This document shows, piece by piece, positions 19,587 through 26,075 of a stretch of DNA of 64,000 nt. The DNA lies in IMG/VR virus record IMGVR_UViG_2162886007_000107, positions 172,431 to 236,430 of that record; one strand, 5' to 3'. The notes under the pieces were generated by a model. The model saw only the letters and a program-made list of their open reading frames with translations, was not told where the DNA came from and searched no databases. The translations under genes were made by a program, and so were the position numbers. Position 1 is the first letter of the stretch. Each line of letters starts with the position of its first letter.

Positions 19587-20186
19587 ATGAACATTAACGA
19601 ACTGCGCGTCGAAATTGTCAAAGAATTTTCCCCTGTATGGGAACTTAACGATAGAGCCCATCGAGTTGAACATTTTGAAGAAGTGTTCAACTGTGGTGTA
19701 GCAATCAACGAAAAGCTGAATCTGGGTTTCGATCCAAAGTTGATTCTCTTTGCTGCTTATTTCCACGATATGTTTGCGTGGAGTCGTAACAATCATCATG
19801 AACTCAGTTTTCACTGGATGATGTCTACGGATAACAAGTTGATTCTGGATAACTTGAATCCTCGTGAAACAATGATTGTGGCGTGGGGTTGTCAGCAACA
19901 TCGTGCTTCGTTTAAAGGCAACTTCAAAAGCGTGTTCTGCGAACTGATCAATTCTGCTGATCGTGGTTTTCCTGGTGACGTTGGGGCTATGTTGAATCGA
20001 GCTGTTCAATTCAGGGAGAAGAAATTTCCCGAGATGACACCGGGTGAACGTGTAGCAGGTGCTGTAAATCACCTGAAAGAAAAGTACGGTACTGGAGGTT
20101 ATGCTCGCTATACCGAAATGTATTTGGAAGTGTTCGGTGATCAGCTTTATCAACAGCGCGCTGATATAGACACTTTGCATTGTTAA
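19587..20186 (+). CDS. HD-domain phosphohydrolase
   Basis: H...H (AHRVEH), FHD, QHR and NSAD metal-binding pattern. Confidence 0.8.
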   Translation: MNINELRVEIVKEFSPVWELNDRAHRVEHFEEVFNCGVAINEKLNLGFDPKLILFAAYFHDMFAWSRNNHHELSFHWMMSTDNKLILDNLNPRETMIVAWGCQQHRASFKGNFKSVFCELINSADRGFPGDVGAMLNRAVQFREKKFPEMTPGERVAGAVNHLKEKYGTGGYARYTEMYLEVFGDQLYQQRADIDTLHC

Positions 20187-20196
20187 GGAGATTATT

Positions 20197-20736
20197 TTGA
20201 ACAAATGGCCAGCTCCTCTTCCTCGTCACCCGCACGTAACCAACCATTTTCCTCAGATGGATCTTCGTGCAATGATGCCTATTATCGAAATCGATAAAGA
20301 AGGGTATCCTGTTAACAGCGGTTTTAGCTTTCTGTCTGGTGTGCAGGCTGACGCAGAAAAAGCTACCAAGAATCGCCCTCTGCAAATCGGGAAGACTGTA
20401 GTCCCTCCATTCGATCCATTCCATGATCACCTGACTACATTGATCCTCAAAGATCCTCAGGTTATGTGGCATGTTAATCGGCTGAACGCATTGCAAGAAA
20501 TTTCACAGACTCCTCTTGGCTATATGTGTAAAAACATGGCCAAGTCGTTCATTAAAGATTTCTGTGGCGAAAATCAGTTGCGGCAAATGTCTGCAAGGTC
20601 CAGCTGGATAATCTCGGATGAAGAAGCAAGTAAGTTGCGTGATGTTCTCACGCATCCTACTCCTTACGTATGTCCTTACCCTGATACGCAAGTATTGGGA
20701 TATGACAGATTCGGTACACCTAAAAAGGATAGTTAA
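20197..20736 (+). CDS. hypothetical protein
   Basis: AAGGAG RBS with TTG start. Confidence 0.65.
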   Translation: MNKWPAPLPRHPHVTNHFPQMDLRAMMPIIEIDKEGYPVNSGFSFLSGVQADAEKATKNRPLQIGKTVVPPFDPFHDHLTTLILKDPQVMWHVNRLNALQEISQTPLGYMCKNMAKSFIKDFCGENQLRQMSARSSWIISDEEASKLRDVLTHPTPYVCPYPDTQVLGYDRFGTPKKDS

Positions 20737-20738
20737 TT

Positions 20739-21182
20739 ATGACTCGTATGCGTAATGTAATTCGTGGTGCTGATAAAGATGTTTTTGATAAAGCTTTCGA
20801 CGCTTTTAACAAAGACGCCCAAATCGCAAAAGGTGAGTTTTATATCAGTGGTATCGTCGCCACCGGTGACGTTACCCGGCATTTCATTCTGGAAGGCCTG
20901 GAGCTACGTCGTGAAACCAAGGACCGCATAATGTCTGCTATCGAAGCTAACCGTTATAAGCCTTCGATAGTAGAGGTAAATAATGCAAAAAATCATTTGG
21001 GACGGCTCAACGATATCGCTAAAGGTCTGGGCGGAGCGACTCATTTGATTAAGTCTTCCGCAAAGATCGTTGCTAAAGGCTCCATGGATAAACTGGGCCA
21101 TGATGAGCCGGTACAAAGTGTTACTCGGAACATCGGGGAACTGGAAGCCACCATCCGTGGCGTTAAACAGTGTTTCCACTAA
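20739..21182 (+). CDS. hypothetical protein
   Basis: AAGGA RBS; 147 aa. Confidence 0.7.
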   Translation: MTRMRNVIRGADKDVFDKAFDAFNKDAQIAKGEFYISGIVATGDVTRHFILEGLELRRETKDRIMSAIEANRYKPSIVEVNNAKNHLGRLNDIAKGLGGATHLIKSSAKIVAKGSMDKLGHDEPVQSVTRNIGELEATIRGVKQCFH

Positions 21183-21199
21183 GTCTCGGGGAGTTTTAA

Positions 21200-21520
21200 A
21201 TGACCGAGGGTGACAAGCCAGAACCTATTCTGATCTCCTCTAAAGGAGAAATGAATACGCAAGCCTGGTGTGCATGGCATCGTGAAAAGTTCAAGAGTAC
21301 TGTCCATCGGGCTCAGATGGCTTTCAATGAGAAAGTCCAGTGCATGCCTGAGCCCGAGATGATCCTTAAAGGAAACAAGGTTAATCCTGTCTGGGTCAAA
21401 TGGTATCGCATGCGCAAAAAGGTTTCTACTAACGTCGCAATATCTGTAGCCCGCAGAAGGCAAACGGCTATTGCAGAAGGTAGAAAACCATTGGAAGAAC
21501 ACCTTACAGCCTGGTGGTAA
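21200..21520 (+). CDS. hypothetical protein, NPxW-motif family
   Basis: KVNPVWVKWYRMRKKVSTNVA. Confidence 0.7.
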   Translation: MTEGDKPEPILISSKGEMNTQAWCAWHREKFKSTVHRAQMAFNEKVQCMPEPEMILKGNKVNPVWVKWYRMRKKVSTNVAISVARRRQTAIAEGRKPLEEHLTAWW

Positions 21521-21522
21521 AT

Positions 21523-21891
21523 ATGCGTGACCATAAACATTTCAAAGGTCCCCTGCCAGTTTTTAATCTGGTTCTTACAGAAGAGATGAAGGAAATTATG
21601 GATAAGAATACTCCGGCAGAAGCTTACGCAAAAGGTCTGCTTGATCCTGAAAAAGTTCAGGCAGTTGAAGTTGATCTCAGTGGGTTCAACGTCAGCCGTC
21701 ACGTCAACTATGAGTCGGCCAAGCAACACGGTTTCGAAGGCACGCCTCATCGCTGGGAGCAAGTCAAGCACAAATACGCTACTGACATGCTCGAAAAGTT
21801 TGGTCCAGATCACCGTATCGATTTCAACAATCTGTTGATCGGTACCGATAACTGGTTTGAATTCCCACCGGAACATCAACAAGGGTTCTGA
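21523..21891 (+). CDS. hypothetical protein
   Basis: Operon packing; 122 aa. Confidence 0.65.
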   Translation: MRDHKHFKGPLPVFNLVLTEEMKEIMDKNTPAEAYAKGLLDPEKVQAVEVDLSGFNVSRHVNYESAKQHGFEGTPHRWEQVKHKYATDMLEKFGPDHRIDFNNLLIGTDNWFEFPPEHQQGF

Positions 21892-21893
21892 TC

Positions 21894-22517
21894 ATGAATC
21901 TGCAAGACATTGTGAACGCAACTCTCCTCGGCACTTTCCAAGGTAACCGTGAGGAATTTGCTCTCGACTGCTTTAAGAAGTACGAAGTTGAAGAACCGGC
22001 CTTGTTTCTCAAGAAGCACGTCTCTGTCAACCAGTGGTGGGTTCTTTGGTACATGGCAAAGAACGACGTAGACCGCTTCAAAGCAGCCATGGCCATCATG
22101 CCCCGTTGTAAGGAACTGGCTGCCGATCCAAAAGCCTTTCACTGGTTGCGTCGCCATTGCCAACAGCGTCTGGCTCTTCGTAACCGGATCAAACGCCAGT
22201 ACCAAGCACTGAAAGAAGGGGGTTCTGGCATACCGCTAGATGACATGGTGGAAAATGCGCTTGGGGAACGCATGACCAAGAAAGATAACTTTGAAACAGA
22301 AATCATCTTCCAGGCCGATCTGGTTCCTAAGCATCGTTTCAAGCTTACGGACATGCATGGAGGCAAAGGCGTGATCGTTAAGGTTATCCCTAATGATCAA
22401 CTCCCGAAAGACCGCAATGGCAAGGTTGCGGACATTACCCTCCACGACTACCCGTCTTCTCCGTTCCGTCGTCCTGAAGGCGACAGCTGGATTAGCAATC
22501 TTCCCCGCAAGAAATAA
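21894..22517 (+). CDS. NPxW-family protein fused to an RNA polymerase beta-like fragment
   Basis: VNQWWVLWYM in the N-terminal half; C-terminal FKLTDMHGGKGVIVKVIPNDQLPKDRNGKVADI. Confidence 0.7.
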   Translation: MNLQDIVNATLLGTFQGNREEFALDCFKKYEVEEPALFLKKHVSVNQWWVLWYMAKNDVDRFKAAMAIMPRCKELAADPKAFHWLRRHCQQRLALRNRIKRQYQALKEGGSGIPLDDMVENALGERMTKKDNFETEIIFQADLVPKHRFKLTDMHGGKGVIVKVIPNDQLPKDRNGKVADITLHDYPSSPFRRPEGDSWISNLPRKK

Positions 22518-22569
22518 AAACGCTGTAACCTTACAAACTGTTGGCTACATTTCTTATTAGGAGTTTCAC

Positions 22570-23001
22570 ATGTTCAAGAAAGTAATCTTGGTAGTAGCGC
22601 TGTTCCCTACTCTGGCTTTTGCTGCATTGTCTAACAATCGTGTCATCGACAGTGCTCCGGTGTTGAACTCGTTTACTTGCCAGAAATACACCGACAATGA
22701 ACTGAGCATGGAACAAGGATATCTGACCGATAACCCGGCGACCGATCTGGTCTTCAATATCGATCAGACCAAATACGAGTTCATCGTTAAGAAGAACGAT
22801 CTACTCAAGAAAGATATTCGCCTCACCATTCCTGAAGGCGGAAACATCAGTGGCATGTCTGGCAATGCCCACGAAATGATGTTCAAGCGAATCGACGGTG
22901 ATGACAAGCCGTATTTCGTTATCTACTTCACCAACTCCGATCCAAAGTCGGATGGTGGTATCAATCGCGCGGTATTCATCGCCAAGTGCGACAAGGGTTA
23001 A
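22570..23001 (+). CDS. putative exported/periplasmic protein
   Basis: AGGAG RBS; signal peptide MFKKVILVVALFPTLAFA; two Cys. Confidence 0.75.
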   Translation: MFKKVILVVALFPTLAFAALSNNRVIDSAPVLNSFTCQKYTDNELSMEQGYLTDNPATDLVFNIDQTKYEFIVKKNDLLKKDIRLTIPEGGNISGMSGNAHEMMFKRIDGDDKPYFVIYFTNSDPKSDGGINRAVFIAKCDKG

Positions 23002-23004
23002 GTC

Positions 23005-24156
23005 ATGAACTTTATTACCGATACTGATCCAAGCCAAACGTTTTCAATTGTTACCACTATCAATGGTAGCGCCCAAGACATCCAGCGTTGCAACCTGGAC
23101 CTGATCCCACTCGTTGAACATCTGCTCGACGGGTTCCGTGAAGAAACCTCCCTCCGCCACTTCGTGGATGTGCAGGATCGTTTCTTTGTTGCGATCGAGA
23201 ACTCCACCGGTTTGGCGGTCGCATTGCTGGTGTTGACGAAGGAGACTGTAAAGTTTCTTTACGTACACAAGCCTTACCGTCGCCAGGGCCTGGCCACCAA
23301 ACTGTACAAGGAAGCAGTCGAGTATGGTGAAAAACAACCATACTTTGTTTTCATGTACAACCCTGTGGTAAAGGAGGCCGGGAAGTTCTTGACCTCTATC
23401 GGCGCGCTGGATGCCTTTTTGCAAGATTCAGCAGAAGGTGTGTCAGGCGGGAAAGTTCTCGTCCATACCCGTCGTGTCTATCTGAAGCCTGGCGGCTTAC
23501 ATCAACCAAAACACAAGCCTTGGGAGTTGCACGGTCTTCCGGTTAATGTGCATTTGGAGTTTTCTAGCCAGACTACAACTAACCTGAACGTCAAAACCCA
23601 GCTGGCAGAAATGATCAAGCTGTTGAAAGAAGAGGTCGGTGACACTGAAGCTACCACTGAACAAAATTATATTTTGGCAGTGGAGTACCCGAGCAATACT
23701 CCGATCGGTTTCCTTACAGCAGAACAGTCTTTTGCCTGCCGACGGTTAACCGGTGTTTGGATCAAGCCGGAATATCGTCGTAAGAACATTGCAACTGTTT
23801 TGGTTGCAACTCTTATTTCGTATGGCACCCTGGACGACGCCACCATGGCTGCTGTCGGTGTAAACAATTTGGCAGCTCGTGAGTTCTTTGGGTATGTTGG
23901 ATTTGAGCCCACCAATCTCAGTCCAAATAAACAAGAACAGTTTTACAGAATGACCAATGGGGATCTGAAACGCCAAGAGTACCTTTGTAAAGATCGTCAA
24001 ACAATCATCGACTCCAAGAGCTACGTGTATTGGGACGGTCCTGAAGAAGTAACTCTTGACGGCAGTTACAACCTGACTGAACTGAAGGCGCTTGTTCGTT
24101 TCATCGAGAACGGTGGTCCTGGTAAGGGTCACAAGAAACACGAAGAAATCTTTTAA
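23005..24156 (+). CDS. tandem GNAT acetyltransferase (two domains)
   Basis: Motif A twice: LYVHKPYRRQGLA and VWIKPEYRRKNIA. Confidence 0.8.
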   Translation: MNFITDTDPSQTFSIVTTINGSAQDIQRCNLDLIPLVEHLLDGFREETSLRHFVDVQDRFFVAIENSTGLAVALLVLTKETVKFLYVHKPYRRQGLATKLYKEAVEYGEKQPYFVFMYNPVVKEAGKFLTSIGALDAFLQDSAEGVSGGKVLVHTRRVYLKPGGLHQPKHKPWELHGLPVNVHLEFSSQTTTNLNVKTQLAEMIKLLKEEVGDTEATTEQNYILAVEYPSNTPIGFLTAEQSFACRRLTGVWIKPEYRRKNIATVLVATLISYGTLDDATMAAVGVNNLAAREFFGYVGFEPTNLSPNKQEQFYRMTNGDLKRQEYLCKDRQTIIDSKSYVYWDGPEEVTLDGSYNLTELKALVRFIENGGPGKGHKKHEEIF

Positions 24157-24166
24157 TAAACCTTAA

Positions 24167-24196
24167 TAGCAGAGTACCCCTAGGGGTACTCTGTTT
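24167..24196 (+). terminator. hairpin nearly identical to 4411-4440
   Basis: TAGCAGAGTACCCC-TA-GGGGTACTCTG. Confidence 0.65.
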
Positions 24197-24215
24197 CACT
24201 TTGAGAGTATTTTTT

Positions 24216-24911
24216 ATGAACGGCGAAATCCCTAAAGACTATCTGGCTATTCCTTTGCAAGAAGGTCGTACTGTTCGCAGTATCAACGTTGCTGTTATCC
24301 AAAAGGATTTCGGTGACATGCTCAAAGAGCAGCGTTATACCAACATGCATCATGCTCTTGTTTCTTTGTTTGTAATGCGTAATCAAGAAGTAGCTCCGAG
24401 CAATGAAGTTTTTGTTATTAGCGCGCTGGAGCATTACATCAAACACACCACCCACATTTATTTGGCTTTGACCGAAGAGAATGTGGTTATCGGCTATGCC
24501 TTGGCCGATAAAGCTTACGTACATGACATTTTTGTCGCAAAAGAATATCGTCGTGATCGCATCGGCATTAGCCTGGTCAACATGATCATGCACAAAAACC
24601 AGGAAGCCGAATACGTCAACTTCCTCAGCAAACGGGAAAAGAAAGAGCCTTGCGAAAGTTACTTCTTCAGTAAGCTTGAGGCCAGTCACCCGCACTGTGG
24701 ATACAACAACGATCATTTCAAGCATTCGCATCAAGTGGTTAACCAGGTCGCTCGTCGGGAAAAGGCCCGCAAAGAAATCACCGGACGTTTGGCTGTATTG
24801 GCTGCAGATTACGAGGTTGTCCAAGGTAAGGTTAAACTGGATGGCCTATTTAGTGTCAAACAATTGCACCTGCTCGCTGAATTGGCCGAGCTTGAAGAAG
24901 GAACGCGTTAA
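24216..24911 (+). CDS. GNAT acetyltransferase
   Basis: VIGYA...DIFVAKEYRRDRIG. Confidence 0.75.
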   Translation: MNGEIPKDYLAIPLQEGRTVRSINVAVIQKDFGDMLKEQRYTNMHHALVSLFVMRNQEVAPSNEVFVISALEHYIKHTTHIYLALTEENVVIGYALADKAYVHDIFVAKEYRRDRIGISLVNMIMHKNQEAEYVNFLSKREKKEPCESYFFSKLEASHPHCGYNNDHFKHSHQVVNQVARREKARKEITGRLAVLAADYEVVQGKVKLDGLFSVKQLHLLAELAELEEGTR

Positions 24912-25549
24912 TGGAATTTAAACACTTCAAACGAATTAAAGATCTGGTCGATGGTGAACTAGCTTTCTCCAATGGGTGGATGGATTATCGTCAGAAGCTA
25001 ATGTGCTTTGTAACTCGGCATGATGGTCTGGATCCGATTGAAGATCACCAATATGCTACAAACTATTTTGGTCAACTAATCCGTGGTTACGATATCAAAG
25101 ACGTCGTAATTGCTCTGGACGATAACGACGAGATCATCGGGTTTATCTGGGGCGACAATGGCGACATTGGTTTGGTGAAGGTTCCCCTAGCTTTGCGTCG
25201 TAAGCAGATCGCTACCAAAATGCTTAAACTGTATTTGGAGAAGACCGAGCCAAAAGCCGGTAAGTACGAATACTACTCTCACTGGTTCCATGAAGATGTA
25301 GGCCTGGCCAAGCTTTTTCTTGCACAAGGGTTTACTATCACCAGTATCCATGATGTCCAGTCGCCCACGCTGACTCGCATCATTGCAACCAAAGCAGCTC
25401 CTGATGATTTTCATGAGAAGCGTTTGGATGCTGCTGATCGTGGATATGTTGACTTCCGTGAGGATTATGCGGTGGTTGATGGTCATTACACGTTGGATCA
25501 ACTGGAGTCTCTGCTCGTGCTTGCACGTAAGGAACTGAAAGGTGGTTAA
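24911..25549 (+). CDS. GNAT acetyltransferase
   Basis: IIGFI...LVKVPLALRRKQIATKML...FLAQGF. Confidence 0.7.
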   Translation: MEFKHFKRIKDLVDGELAFSNGWMDYRQKLMCFVTRHDGLDPIEDHQYATNYFGQLIRGYDIKDVVIALDDNDEIIGFIWGDNGDIGLVKVPLALRRKQIATKMLKLYLEKTEPKAGKYEYYSHWFHEDVGLAKLFLAQGFTITSIHDVQSPTLTRIIATKAAPDDFHEKRLDAADRGYVDFREDYAVVDGHYTLDQLESLLVLARKELKGG

Positions 25550-26075
25550 GAATAACCAGTGGTTGGGTTCGTATTACAAAGTTCGGATGTTTCACAAGGA
25601 CGCTCTGTGTGAACGCACAAAGCAATTACTTTGTAATGCGTGGAATGACCTTACCAAACACGAAATGCGTCTGGTACTGCGTCACGAAGCCATTGCAAAG
25701 GTCTTTGAGCAACATGTCGGGGAACATACTTCATTTGGTCGTGATTCAGAGAAGTTCCATGCTTATTTGGCAGATGTGGAGTGGGTTTACATTATTGAAC
25801 GGATAGGTGTTCCTGGTGTCAGTGCTTTCATGGCTGTTACCAAGGATCAACAAATCCTTTCTCTATTTGTGGCTCCTCCATACCGCGGGAAGAAGCTAGG
25901 GACGTATCTGGTAAACAACCATCTGGAGATCTTCGGCAAGCCGGTGTCGTTGCAGTGCTTTAAGTTTAATGAACTAGCTTTAAAGTTCTACTCGTTCATT
26001 GGCTTCAAAGCCAGCTATGTGGCTAGCCGTGAAAATAATGGTGATCTGTATGACACACTGGTTCGTATGGTTTAA
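25542..26075 (+). CDS. GNAT acetyltransferase
   Basis: LFVAPPYRGKKLG...NELALKFYSFIGF; start could be ATG 25587. Confidence 0.8.
   Translation: MVKNNQWLGSYYKVRMFHKDALCERTKQLLCNAWNDLTKHEMRLVLRHEAIAKVFEQHVGEHTSFGRDSEKFHAYLADVEWVYIIERIGVPGVSAFMAVTKDQQILSLFVAPPYRGKKLGTYLVNNHLEIFGKPVSLQCFKFNELALKFYSFIGFKASYVASRENNGDLYDTLVRMV

What the first reader, a model, noticed from the sequence alone, without database searches (positions are those of the whole stretch)
22290..22470. RNA polymerase beta active-site fragment grafted onto a 207-aa accessory protein
Seen: FETEIIFQADLVPKHRFKLTDMHGGKGVIVKVIPNDQLPKDRNGKVADITLH at the C-terminus of an NPxW-family protein. Known: this corresponds to the beta-subunit GDK.xGRHGNKGV...dMP...G...DI motif containing the two conserved NTP-proximal lysines. 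From recall, the KLTDxHGGKG form is typical of phiKZ-type RNAP subunits. A ~60-aa piece cannot form a polymerase. Inference: either a recombination relic of the phage's own RNAP gene or a decoy/mimic for factors or immune sensors that recognise RNAP.
Basis: partly seen in the sequence, partly recalled or inferred. Interest (0 to 1): 0.75.

Follow-up and report, generated by a model that had tools for sequence, protein, structure and literature searches.

The report
RNA polymerase hairpin reused in phage protein
A giant (236 kb) phage carries a small, fast-swapping accessory gene whose tail is an old, selectively maintained copy of the active-site hairpin of the phage's own RNA polymerase beta subunit; it cannot be a polymerase, so it most likely imitates that surface, but its job is untested.

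Summary
Window 21894..22517 (+) encodes a 207-aa protein. Residues ~125-201 match conserved region H (the two-lysine double-psi beta-barrel hairpin) of phiKZ-type non-virion RNAP beta (PDB 7OGP chain C, E 1.5e-9; phrog_3295, E 5.6e-15).

It is not a decaying relic:
- An ortholog is gap-free with dN/dS 0.2.
- About 20 small proteins from uncultured jumbo phages share only this module, on at least four unrelated N-termini. Several sit at the same syntenic position.
- The module is not a recent copy of the resident beta gene (44% identity).
- The catalytic lysines are relaxed. The second is K in 32 of 32 full-length betas but in only 5 of 21 small proteins.
- Both phage RNAPs keep their own hairpin.

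The gene is a sharp divergence island between nearly identical flanks. The module's centre coincides with the group I intron / HNH insertion site of phiKZ gp71/73.

Best reading, at modest confidence: an exapted, non-catalytic mimic of an RNAP surface in a conflict-type cassette. Its partner and function are unknown, and the structure and complex predictions were uninformative. The main rival is a by-product of intron and homing-endonuclease recombination.

The parts
21894..22517 (+). Gene for the 207-aa accessory protein. Its ATG lies 2 nt after the stop of the upstream gene.
   Evidence: Identical protein on record (P0001). Ortholog P0002 is 72% identical with no gaps.
21981..22118 (+). Residues ~30-75: one unit of the EPxL...NPxWVxWY repeat (the 'NPxW' family).
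   Evidence: Iterative HMM search of the genome's ORFs and the resulting alignment.
22119..22265 (+). Residues ~76-124: predicted long helices linking the two parts.
   Evidence: AF2 model, helices 79-107 and 115-132, moderate confidence.
22266..22496 (+). Residues ~125-201: module derived from nvRNAP beta region H (C-terminal half of the beta double-psi beta-barrel).
   Evidence: Some HMMER alignments to full-length betas reach residue 193-201.
22338..22391 (+). Residues 149-166, FKLTDMHGGKGVIVKVIP: the core hairpin, the only piece shared by every family member.
22341..22343 (+). K150, equivalent to phiKZ gp71-73 K386 and E. coli beta K1065.
   Evidence: It is E in ortholog P0002.
22365..22367 (+). 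K158, equivalent to gp71-73 K394 and E. coli beta K1073.
   Evidence: It is R, N, M or C in 16 of 21 small-protein copies and K in 32 of 32 betas.
22359..22364 (+). Codons G156-G157: the position homologous to the group I intron insertion site of phiKZ-type beta genes (HG^GK). No intron is present here.
   Evidence: site mapped in phiKZ-type phages; no intron or HNH gene found in this window or genome.
22482..22514 (+). Residues 197-207, DSWISNLPRKK: basic C-terminal tail, conserved in P0002, P0003, P0004 and P0005.
21514..21891 (+). Upstream 125-aa gene: the conserved left flank of the variable cassette.
   Evidence: 100% aa identity to L010 and 97.4% nt identity to L027 up to the target gene's start codon.
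22570..23001 (+). Downstream 143-aa gene with an N-terminal signal-peptide-like sequence: the conserved right flank.
   Evidence: 100% aa identity to L010. Homologs follow the module gene in L028 and L031.
21200..21520 (+). 106-aa paralog made of two NPxW-type repeat units.
   Evidence: Homologs lie upstream of the module gene in L028 and L031.

Best explanation
Shown: the gene is a real, maintained accessory gene of a distant Elvirus-like jumbo phage. Its last ~80 residues are an exapted, non-catalytic copy of nvRNAP beta region H, the beta hairpin that carries the two active-centre lysines plus the following loop and strand. That segment is half of a double-psi beta-barrel. The copy is old and evolves under its own constraints. 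It is the only constant part of a family of small proteins whose N-terminal parts are exchanged by recombination inside a hypervariable cassette. Inferred: the module works as a structural mimic of that RNAP surface. On its own it is an unfolded or partner-dependent peptide. It would dock onto whatever normally recognises this beta element: the beta' barrel or sigma-like subunit during nvRNAP assembly, an assembly or import factor, or an RNAP-directed factor of a competing phage or the host. The variable N-terminal domain would set specificity or deliver the effect. The outcome would be modulation or poisoning of an RNAP, or titration of an RNAP-binding factor, in phage-phage or phage-host conflict.
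For: Homology and register with the two-lysine hairpin.

Purifying selection in situ, window versus the syntenic ortholog on L010: no indels or stops; dN/dS is 0.20 for the whole gene and 0.22 for residues 138-195; the excess of synonymous change has P = 8e-4 for the module and 4e-12 for the gene.

Long-term constraint: among small-protein modules pS is 0.6-1.0 while pN is 0.16-0.25.

Family: about 20 small proteins of 120-340 aa share only the module on at least four N-terminal architectures. Members lie at the same syntenic position in L010, L027, L028 and L031.

Not catalytic: the second lysine is K in 32 of 32 betas but 5 of 21 small copies (Fisher P = 1.4e-9). The first lysine is E, Q or S in some copies.

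Not needed for the polymerases: the resident nvRNAP beta (735 aa) and the vRNAP beta-like protein (1466 aa) each keep their own motif.

Not a recent copy: 44% identity to the resident beta. The resident betas form a separate clade (99/95 support), while the small copies cluster together (3 label changes against 13.3 in shuffles).

Conflict-type locus: flanking genes are 99-100% identical between the window and L010 (dS ~0.2), but this gene is 72% identical (dS 0.82, dN 0.164). In L027 the flank is 97% identical up to the ATG and the N-terminal part is then replaced.

The module is not predicted to fold alone, which fits partner-dependent folding.
Against: - No partner is identified. The only complex test (207 aa plus the resident beta'N) scored 0.01, 'no answer'.
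- AF2 confidence is low, so 'unfolded alone' is weak evidence.
- There is no expression evidence. RNA-library contigs cover neighbouring genes but not this gene, at very low depth.
- In-situ selection rests on one ortholog pair and 58-207 codons.
- In the intact enzyme the hairpin is an integral strand pair of the beta barrel. It is unclear that a free copy could reach the same contacts.
- Hypervariability may simply reflect a recombination hot spot.
- The coincidence with an intron insertion site suggests a different origin or role (see rivals).
Confidence: 0.35

Rival explanations
1. By-product of intron and homing-endonuclease biology. The module is an ectopic copy of a homing site. Segments centred on the intron insertion site of the beta gene were copied into, and are shuffled within, a non-essential cassette by repair or gene conversion triggered by HNH nicking. 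In sister proteins the same applies to the beta' NADFDGD site. The protein-level role of the module would be incidental.
For: In phiKZ-type phages a group I intron interrupts the beta gene at HG^GK, the exact centre of the module core. The intron is 307 bp, or 1218 bp with an HNH gene. In phage EL an HNH-containing intron splits beta'N at NA^DFDGD. Of 95 beta'N homolog gene calls, 44 lack an intact motif, and many stop at NA, NADFDG or IAIF. Sister proteins carry an 'MNADF[ED]G' piece that aligns to beta'N and ends at NADFDG (E 0.0025-0.015). Module length varies from about 20 to 80 aa but always spans the insertion site. Tandem partial duplications of the core occur in P0003, P0037, P0053 and L048. 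Intron HNH nickases are known weapons between co-infecting jumbo phages (PMC11620839).
Against: Synonymous sites in the core are saturated among family members, so no DNA-level constraint is visible. The amino-acid sequence is under purifying selection in situ. No intron, group I RNA or HNH homolog is found in this window or genome. Introns and detectable fragments are both expected to fall on the most conserved motif, so part of the coincidence has a trivial common cause. An ectopic cleavable site would be a liability to the phage.
Confidence: 0.25
2. Decoy for host immunity. The module imitates an epitope of the phage RNAP that a bacterial defence system senses or attacks, and soaks it up. 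This is the second alternative offered by the first reader.
For: The same evidence as for mimicry in general: a conserved non-catalytic module, relaxed lysines and a hypervariable cassette typical of conflict genes. The neighbourhood is rich in accessory genes (an array of GNAT acetyltransferases, a secreted protein, an HD protein).
Against: A literature search turned up no defence system reported to sense nvRNAP beta. In nucleus-forming phages the nvRNAP is shielded in the phage nucleus. PADLOC was not scanned. There is no direct evidence.
Confidence: 0.15
3. Exapted scaffold with a function unrelated to RNAP. The hairpin is kept only as a convenient structural element, for example a dimerisation half-barrel or a nucleic-acid or phosphate-binding loop.
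For: Half double-psi barrels are homologous repeats that could in principle pair. Some members have two tandem copies. The conserved residues (T, D, H, G..GV, P) are mainly structural.
Against: The shortest members keep only about 20 residues, too few for a half-barrel. AF2 gives no confident fold. Homodimerisation was not tested.
Confidence: 0.15
4. Neutral recombination relic of an RNAP gene that happens to lie in frame.
For: It is a fragment of a larger gene, in a region full of small ORFs of unknown function.
Against: There are no indels or stops across dS 0.6-0.8, and dN/dS is 0.2 with P < 0.001. The module is retained in positional orthologs whose flanking proteins are only 37-71% identical. 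It is the one constant part of the family.
Confidence: 0.05
5. A genuine split piece of a polymerase that supplies the two-lysine hairpin in trans to an RNAP lacking it.
For: Jumbo-phage RNAPs are split into several polypeptides. The vRNAP beta-like protein ends just after its region-H-like motif, so this is a natural break point.
Against: Both RNAP sets have their own motif: FKIAGMNGDKGV in the 735-aa beta and ADKFVVGNQMKATTGF...EDGKAVHL in the 1466-aa protein. The lysines are not conserved in the small proteins. Cultured jumbo phages have one copy only.
Confidence: 0.03

Closest known systems
phiKZ nvRNAP beta C-terminal subunit gp71-73 (PDB 7OGP chain C; phrog_3295)
   Same: Residues ~125-201 are homologous to gp71-73 residues ~361-430. 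This is the second half of the beta double-psi barrel with K386 and K394. The motif FKLTDMHGGKGV...P.D..G..ADI follows the phiKZ-type consensus.
   Different: It covers under 10% of the subunit. It lacks the first barrel half, flap, clamp and other regions. It is fused to an unrelated helical N-terminus. The catalytic lysines are not conserved among its orthologs. It is not the resident beta and not close to it (44% identity).
Bacterial RpoB conserved region H (E. coli beta 1065-1100; Pfam RNA_pol_Rpb2_6)
   Same: The same motif register, with K1065 and K1073 aligned.
   Different: The Pfam score is 13.9 bits, below the 23.4-bit gathering cut-off, and only profile positions 226-259 of 373 are covered.
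Group I intron / HNH homing sites in jumbo-phage RNAP genes (phiKZ gp71/72/73, gp55/56/56.1; EL ORF024-026; PhiPA3 gp210, PMC11620839)
   Same: The module core straddles the homologous intron insertion site (HG^GK). Sister proteins carry a piece ending at the beta' site NADFDG.
   Different: There is no intron, HNH gene or DNA-level conservation here. The sequence is translated and constrained as protein.
Phage-encoded protein mimics and decoys in general (for example Ocr-type mimicry). This is recalled knowledge, used as an analogy only.
   Same: A small accessory protein in a variable locus that imitates a surface normally recognised by another factor.
   Different: This would be a fragment of the phage's own essential enzyme rather than a DNA mimic. 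No target is known.

Membership tests
Multisubunit RNAP beta subunit (functional polymerase subunit) | Complete beta architecture: both halves of the double-psi barrel plus the hybrid-binding, flap and clamp regions. Pfam RNA_pol_Rpb2_6 at or above the gathering score. | tested here: not met
   Only phrog_3295 positions 372-433 of 698 are matched. Pfam gives 13.9 bits against a 23.4-bit cut-off over profile positions 226-259 of 373.
Multisubunit RNAP beta subunit (functional polymerase subunit) | The two active-centre lysines are present and invariant. | tested here: not met
   K150 and K158 are present in the window protein. The first is E in ortholog P0002. The second is non-K in 16 of 21 small-protein copies, against 0 of 32 betas.
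Multisubunit RNAP beta subunit (functional polymerase subunit) | Required because the genome's RNAPs lack this element. | tested here: not met
   The resident nvRNAP beta and the vRNAP beta-like protein both carry their own motif.
Homolog (fragment) of phiKZ-type nvRNAP beta region H | Significant sequence similarity in register with the two-lysine hairpin. | tested here: met
   E 5.6e-15, E 1.5e-9, and about 30 betas at E <= 1e-3 in 1.8 billion proteins.
Local 'NPxW' repeat family | Shares the ~45-aa EPxL...NPxWVxWY unit with paralogs in the same genome. | tested here: met
   First-pass phmmer E 3.8e-4 and 9.5e-4 among 1123 ORFs. The family converges on four ORFs.
Mobile group I intron / homing-endonuclease element | Presence of an intron RNA or a homing endonuclease gene at or next to the site. 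| tested here: not met
   No Rfam family is found in the window. No homolog of the EL or phiKZ-type HNH proteins is found in the genome. The gene is followed by a 52-nt spacer and an ordinary ORF.
Mobile group I intron / homing-endonuclease element | The sequence is a cleavable homing site. | not testable with these tools
   This needs a nuclease assay. At the DNA level the core is 84% identical over 63 nt to one distant beta gene and about 62% identical to the phiKZ-type intron-less allele.
Protein mimic or decoy of an RNAP surface | Binds a factor that normally recognises the imitated surface. | tested here: inconclusive
   Complex prediction with the resident beta'N scored 0.01, which the tool reports as no evidence either way.

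The most novel reading that the evidence does not exclude
A previously undescribed family of jumbo-phage 'active-centre mimic' proteins. They are small cassette proteins assembled from catalytically disabled copies of the two RNAP active-site elements: the beta two-lysine hairpin and, in sister alleles, the beta' NADFDG loop. Phages would use them to interfere with the assembly, import or activity of a multisubunit RNAP, most plausibly that of a co-infecting competitor. Under frequency-dependent selection the alleles turn over rapidly. The same two motifs are the targets of intron homing endonucleases, so the RNAP active-site motifs would be a shared battlefield of phage-phage conflict at both the DNA and the protein level.
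Probability: 0.15. Interest if true: 0.85.

Novelty: new variant of a known kind. Interest (0 to 1): 0.62.

Why it matters
If the module really acts as an RNAP-surface mimic, it would be a new class of phage accessory factor: a fragment of the virus's own essential enzyme turned into a tool. It would also give a handle on how split jumbo-phage RNAPs are assembled, imported or sabotaged during co-infection. Even without a function, the locus is a clean natural example of three things: exaptation of half a double-psi beta-barrel, modular cassette exchange between near-identical phage genomes, and overlap between protein-fragment reuse and intron homing sites. The family is absent from the cultured phage genomes searched here, so it has probably escaped notice.

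Tried and rejected
- Trans-complementation was rejected. Both RNAP sets keep their own region-H motif.
- A recent duplication of the resident beta gene was rejected: 44% aa and 58% nt identity, and a separate clade.
- A neutral relic was rejected.
- A DNA-level function as a conserved homing site is not supported, because synonymous sites are saturated. It cannot be excluded.
- AF2 of the 207-aa protein (pLDDT 63.5) and of sister P0004 (pLDDT 55.7) was too poor for fold searches, so none was run.
- Complex prediction with beta'N gave no answer.
- Megablast of the locus against cultured phages found nothing. tblastn found only full-length beta genes, one place per record.
- Pfam and PHROGs gave nothing for the N-terminal part or for the two flanking genes.
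- The first related-loci run with the broad alignment failed for lack of conserved columns. It was redone with a module-only alignment.
- Reads and contigs from an RNA library did not cover the gene, so expression is untested.
- The beta'-like 'NADF[ED]G' piece of sister proteins is only suggestive (BLASTP E 0.008-0.015; hhalign E 0.0025, probability 12%). It is not present in the window protein.
- Two hits (P0008, P0045) are tandem-repeated cellular rpoB pieces, probably assembly artefacts, and were ignored.

Full report
**What is there.**
The window is the last 64 kb of a 236,430-bp virus record rated complete. The record encodes the two split multisubunit RNA polymerases typical of phiKZ-like jumbo phages:
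- an nvRNAP beta'N with NADFDGD (genome 74844-76481);
- an nvRNAP beta C-terminal subunit of 735 aa (86605-88812; phrog_3295, E 7e-206);
- a beta'C (88809-90821);
- vRNAP-type proteins of 541 aa (DHDGD) and 1466 aa.

By beta'N, the closest cultured relatives are Pseudomonas phages GXNNE2, HHBS47_1 and EL, at 52-54% amino-acid identity. The phage is therefore a distant Elvirus-like jumbo phage. It was seen in soil, rhizosphere, plant and indoor metagenomes.

The finding lies in ORF 21894..22517 (+), 207 aa. The ORF starts 2 nt after the stop of the upstream gene.

**Check of the observation.**
The quoted peptide is residues 133-184. Its similarity to RNAP beta is real:
- phrog_3295, E 5.6e-15, residues 126-187 against profile positions 372-433 of 698;
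- the solved phiKZ nvRNAP subunit gp71-73, E 1.5e-9, residues 125-184 against 361-420;
- weaker hits in register with E. coli beta 1065-1100;
- about 30 full-length jumbo-phage betas in an exhaustive search of 1.8 billion representatives.

K150 and K158 align with gp71-73 K386 and K394. The structure paper names these as the two conserved lysines of the beta double-psi beta-barrel (PMC8287921).

The N-terminus is also as described. Residues ~30-75 are one unit of a ~45-aa repeat (EPxL...NPxWVxWY). The repeat occurs once or twice in three other ORFs of the window. AF2 predicts helices for residues 3-132 and almost no regular structure for the module, at low overall confidence (pLDDT 63.5).

**Not a relic and not a polymerase part.**
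A syntenic ortholog (P0002, on contig L010) is 72% identical with no gaps. Nei-Gojobori dN/dS is 0.20 for the gene and 0.22 for residues 138-195. Synonymous changes are in excess over the neutral expectation, with P = 8e-4 for the module and 4e-12 for the gene.

The resident beta is only 44% identical to the module and keeps its own motif, FKIAGMNGDKGV. The 1466-aa vRNAP protein also has a region-H-like motif near its C-terminus. The fragment is therefore not needed to complete either enzyme.

**A family.**
The exhaustive search and a profile search found about 20 further small proteins (120-340 aa, plus one 486-aa protein and one 591-aa open frame), all from uncultured jumbo phages. They share nothing with the window protein except this module.

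There are at least four N-terminal architectures. The common core is [FY]KLTDMHG[GD][KR]GV[IV]C.V.P[DE]. The shortest members keep only those ~20 residues.

In L010, L027, L028 and L031 the gene sits at the same position. It lies between homologs of the 106-aa repeat protein and the 143-aa signal-peptide protein, upstream of GNAT genes. The flanking proteins are only 37-71% identical in L028 and L031.

Among modules, synonymous sites are saturated (pS 0.6-1.0) while pN is 0.16-0.25.

The second lysine is K in all 32 full-length betas examined but in only 5 of 21 small-protein copies. Elsewhere it is R, N, M or C (Fisher P = 1.4e-9). The first lysine is E in the window protein's own ortholog.

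A tree of the 40-residue core is poorly resolved. It still shows that the small copies cluster (3 label changes against 13.3 in shuffles) and do not join the well-supported clade of the resident-type betas.

Cultured phage genomes show only the full-length gene, one place per record.

**A hypervariable cassette.**
Between the window and L010, the flanking genes are 99-100% identical in protein (dS 0.17-0.21). This gene has dS 0.82 and dN 0.164, and the island's borders coincide with the gene's borders.

In a third relative (L027, also seen as a contig of run X2), the upstream gene is 97.4% identical in DNA up to the start codon. The N-terminal 130 codons are then replaced by an unrelated sequence, and the module resumes at about 80% identity.

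Allelic replacement of this kind is what one sees in genes at a conflict interface. A recombination hot spot could give the same pattern.

**The intron coincidence.**
In phiKZ-type phages the beta gene is split by a group I intron of 307 bp, or 1218 bp when it carries an HNH endonuclease gene. By comparison with an intron-less relative, the insertion lies at codons G397/G398 of FKMTDFHG^GKGV, the centre of the module core.

In phage EL an HNH-containing intron splits beta'N at NA^DFDGD. Of 95 beta'N homolog gene calls, 44 lack an intact motif, and many stop at NA, NADFDG or IAIF.

Several sister proteins of the window protein carry, upstream of the beta module, a piece 'MNADF[ED]G'. Its best alignment in beta'N ends exactly at NADFDG. 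The statistics are only suggestive (E 0.0025-0.015).

Such intron nickases are known weapons between co-infecting jumbo phages (PMC11620839).

The window genome has no homolog of these HNH proteins, and the window has no Rfam-detectable intron. The saturated synonymous sites argue against selection on the DNA sequence itself. Part of the coincidence is expected, because both introns and detectable fragments favour the most conserved motif.

**Interpretation.**
I am confident (about 0.85) of the following:
- this is a real gene;
- its C-terminal module is an old, exapted, non-catalytic copy of beta region H;
- the module is maintained by selection;
- it is the constant part of a modular family.

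How it works is inferred. The most likely mechanism (0.35) is mimicry of that RNAP surface toward a partner of the beta hairpin, with the variable N-terminus giving specificity. The main rival (0.25) is that the fragments are products of intron and homing-endonuclease-driven recombination, with the protein-level role secondary. A host-immunity decoy (0.15), an unrelated scaffold function (0.15), a neutral relic (0.05) and a trans-acting polymerase piece (0.03) follow.

The single complex prediction (with beta'N) gave no answer, and a second AF2 model of a sister protein was also poor. No structural support exists either way. Expression was not shown.

**Novelty.**
My literature searches found no description of small jumbo-phage proteins carrying RNAP active-site fragments. 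I file it as a new variant of a known kind of phenomenon: exaptation of a gene fragment, and possibly protein mimicry in a phage accessory cassette.

Noticed in passing
window 23005-26075: An array of four or five GNAT acetyltransferase paralogs lies directly downstream: a 383-aa double GNAT, then ORFs of 236, 212 and 177 aa. The array is conserved in relatives. Two of the genes (23005-24156 and 24201-24911) are themselves divergence islands between the window and L010, with dS 0.57-0.63 against ~0.1-0.2 in their neighbours.
   Followed up: partly
window 22570-23001: A 143-aa protein with an N-terminal signal-peptide-like sequence (MFKKVILVVALFPTLAFA...). It is 100% conserved in L010 and always follows the module gene in relatives. 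No family hit was found.
   Followed up: partly
window 19587-20186: A 199-aa ORF with a weak HD-domain match (Pfam E 0.0011). Its homolog in L031 is 66% identical.
   Followed up: no
genome G000:C1:26552-30952 (locus L011, outside the window): The 1466-aa vRNAP beta-like protein ends about 30 residues after its own region-H-like motif (ADKFVVGNQMKATTGF...EDGKAVHL). The natural split point of the virion polymerase beta therefore lies at the same boundary as the end of the module.
   Followed up: partly
genome G000:C1:86605-88812 (L021) and L032: The resident nvRNAP beta and that of relative G001 have an atypical sequence exactly at the phiKZ-type intron insertion site: FKIAGMNGDKGV and FKFAGLNGDKGV, against the consensus FKLTDxHGGKGV. 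This could be a homing-endonuclease-resistant allele. It was not tested.
   Followed up: no
L039 (phage EL 28226-31274) and P0055-P0149: The beta'N genes of EL-like phages are often interrupted within or just after NADFDGD, at no fewer than three break points (NA^, NADFDG^, IAIF^). EL ORF025 is annotated as an intron-encoded HNH endonuclease.
   Followed up: partly
L047 and L043 (IMGVR_UViG_3300042934_000594), L048, L042: Other jumbo-phage lineages (contigs of 269 kb, 278 kb and 105 kb) also carry non-beta open frames with the core motif. These are frames of 214 aa, 44 aa and 591 aa, and the second lysine is M, C and R respectively. The 269-kb contig has its full beta elsewhere.
   Followed up: partly
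P0003, P0037, P0053, L048: Tandem partial duplications of the FKLTD...G.GV core occur within single small proteins.
   Followed up: no
L028 12726-12936: The 229-kb relative that carries P0016 encodes a Cpn60/GroEL-like protein near the locus, as phage EL does. This is consistent with an Elvirus-like affiliation.
   Followed up: no
window 20500-24500, run X4: An RNA-Seq library from a plant metagenome holds low-depth contigs 95-100% identical to neighbouring genes (20500-20845, 21038-21282, 22570-22837) but none over the 207-aa gene. DNA carry-over cannot be excluded.
   Followed up: partly
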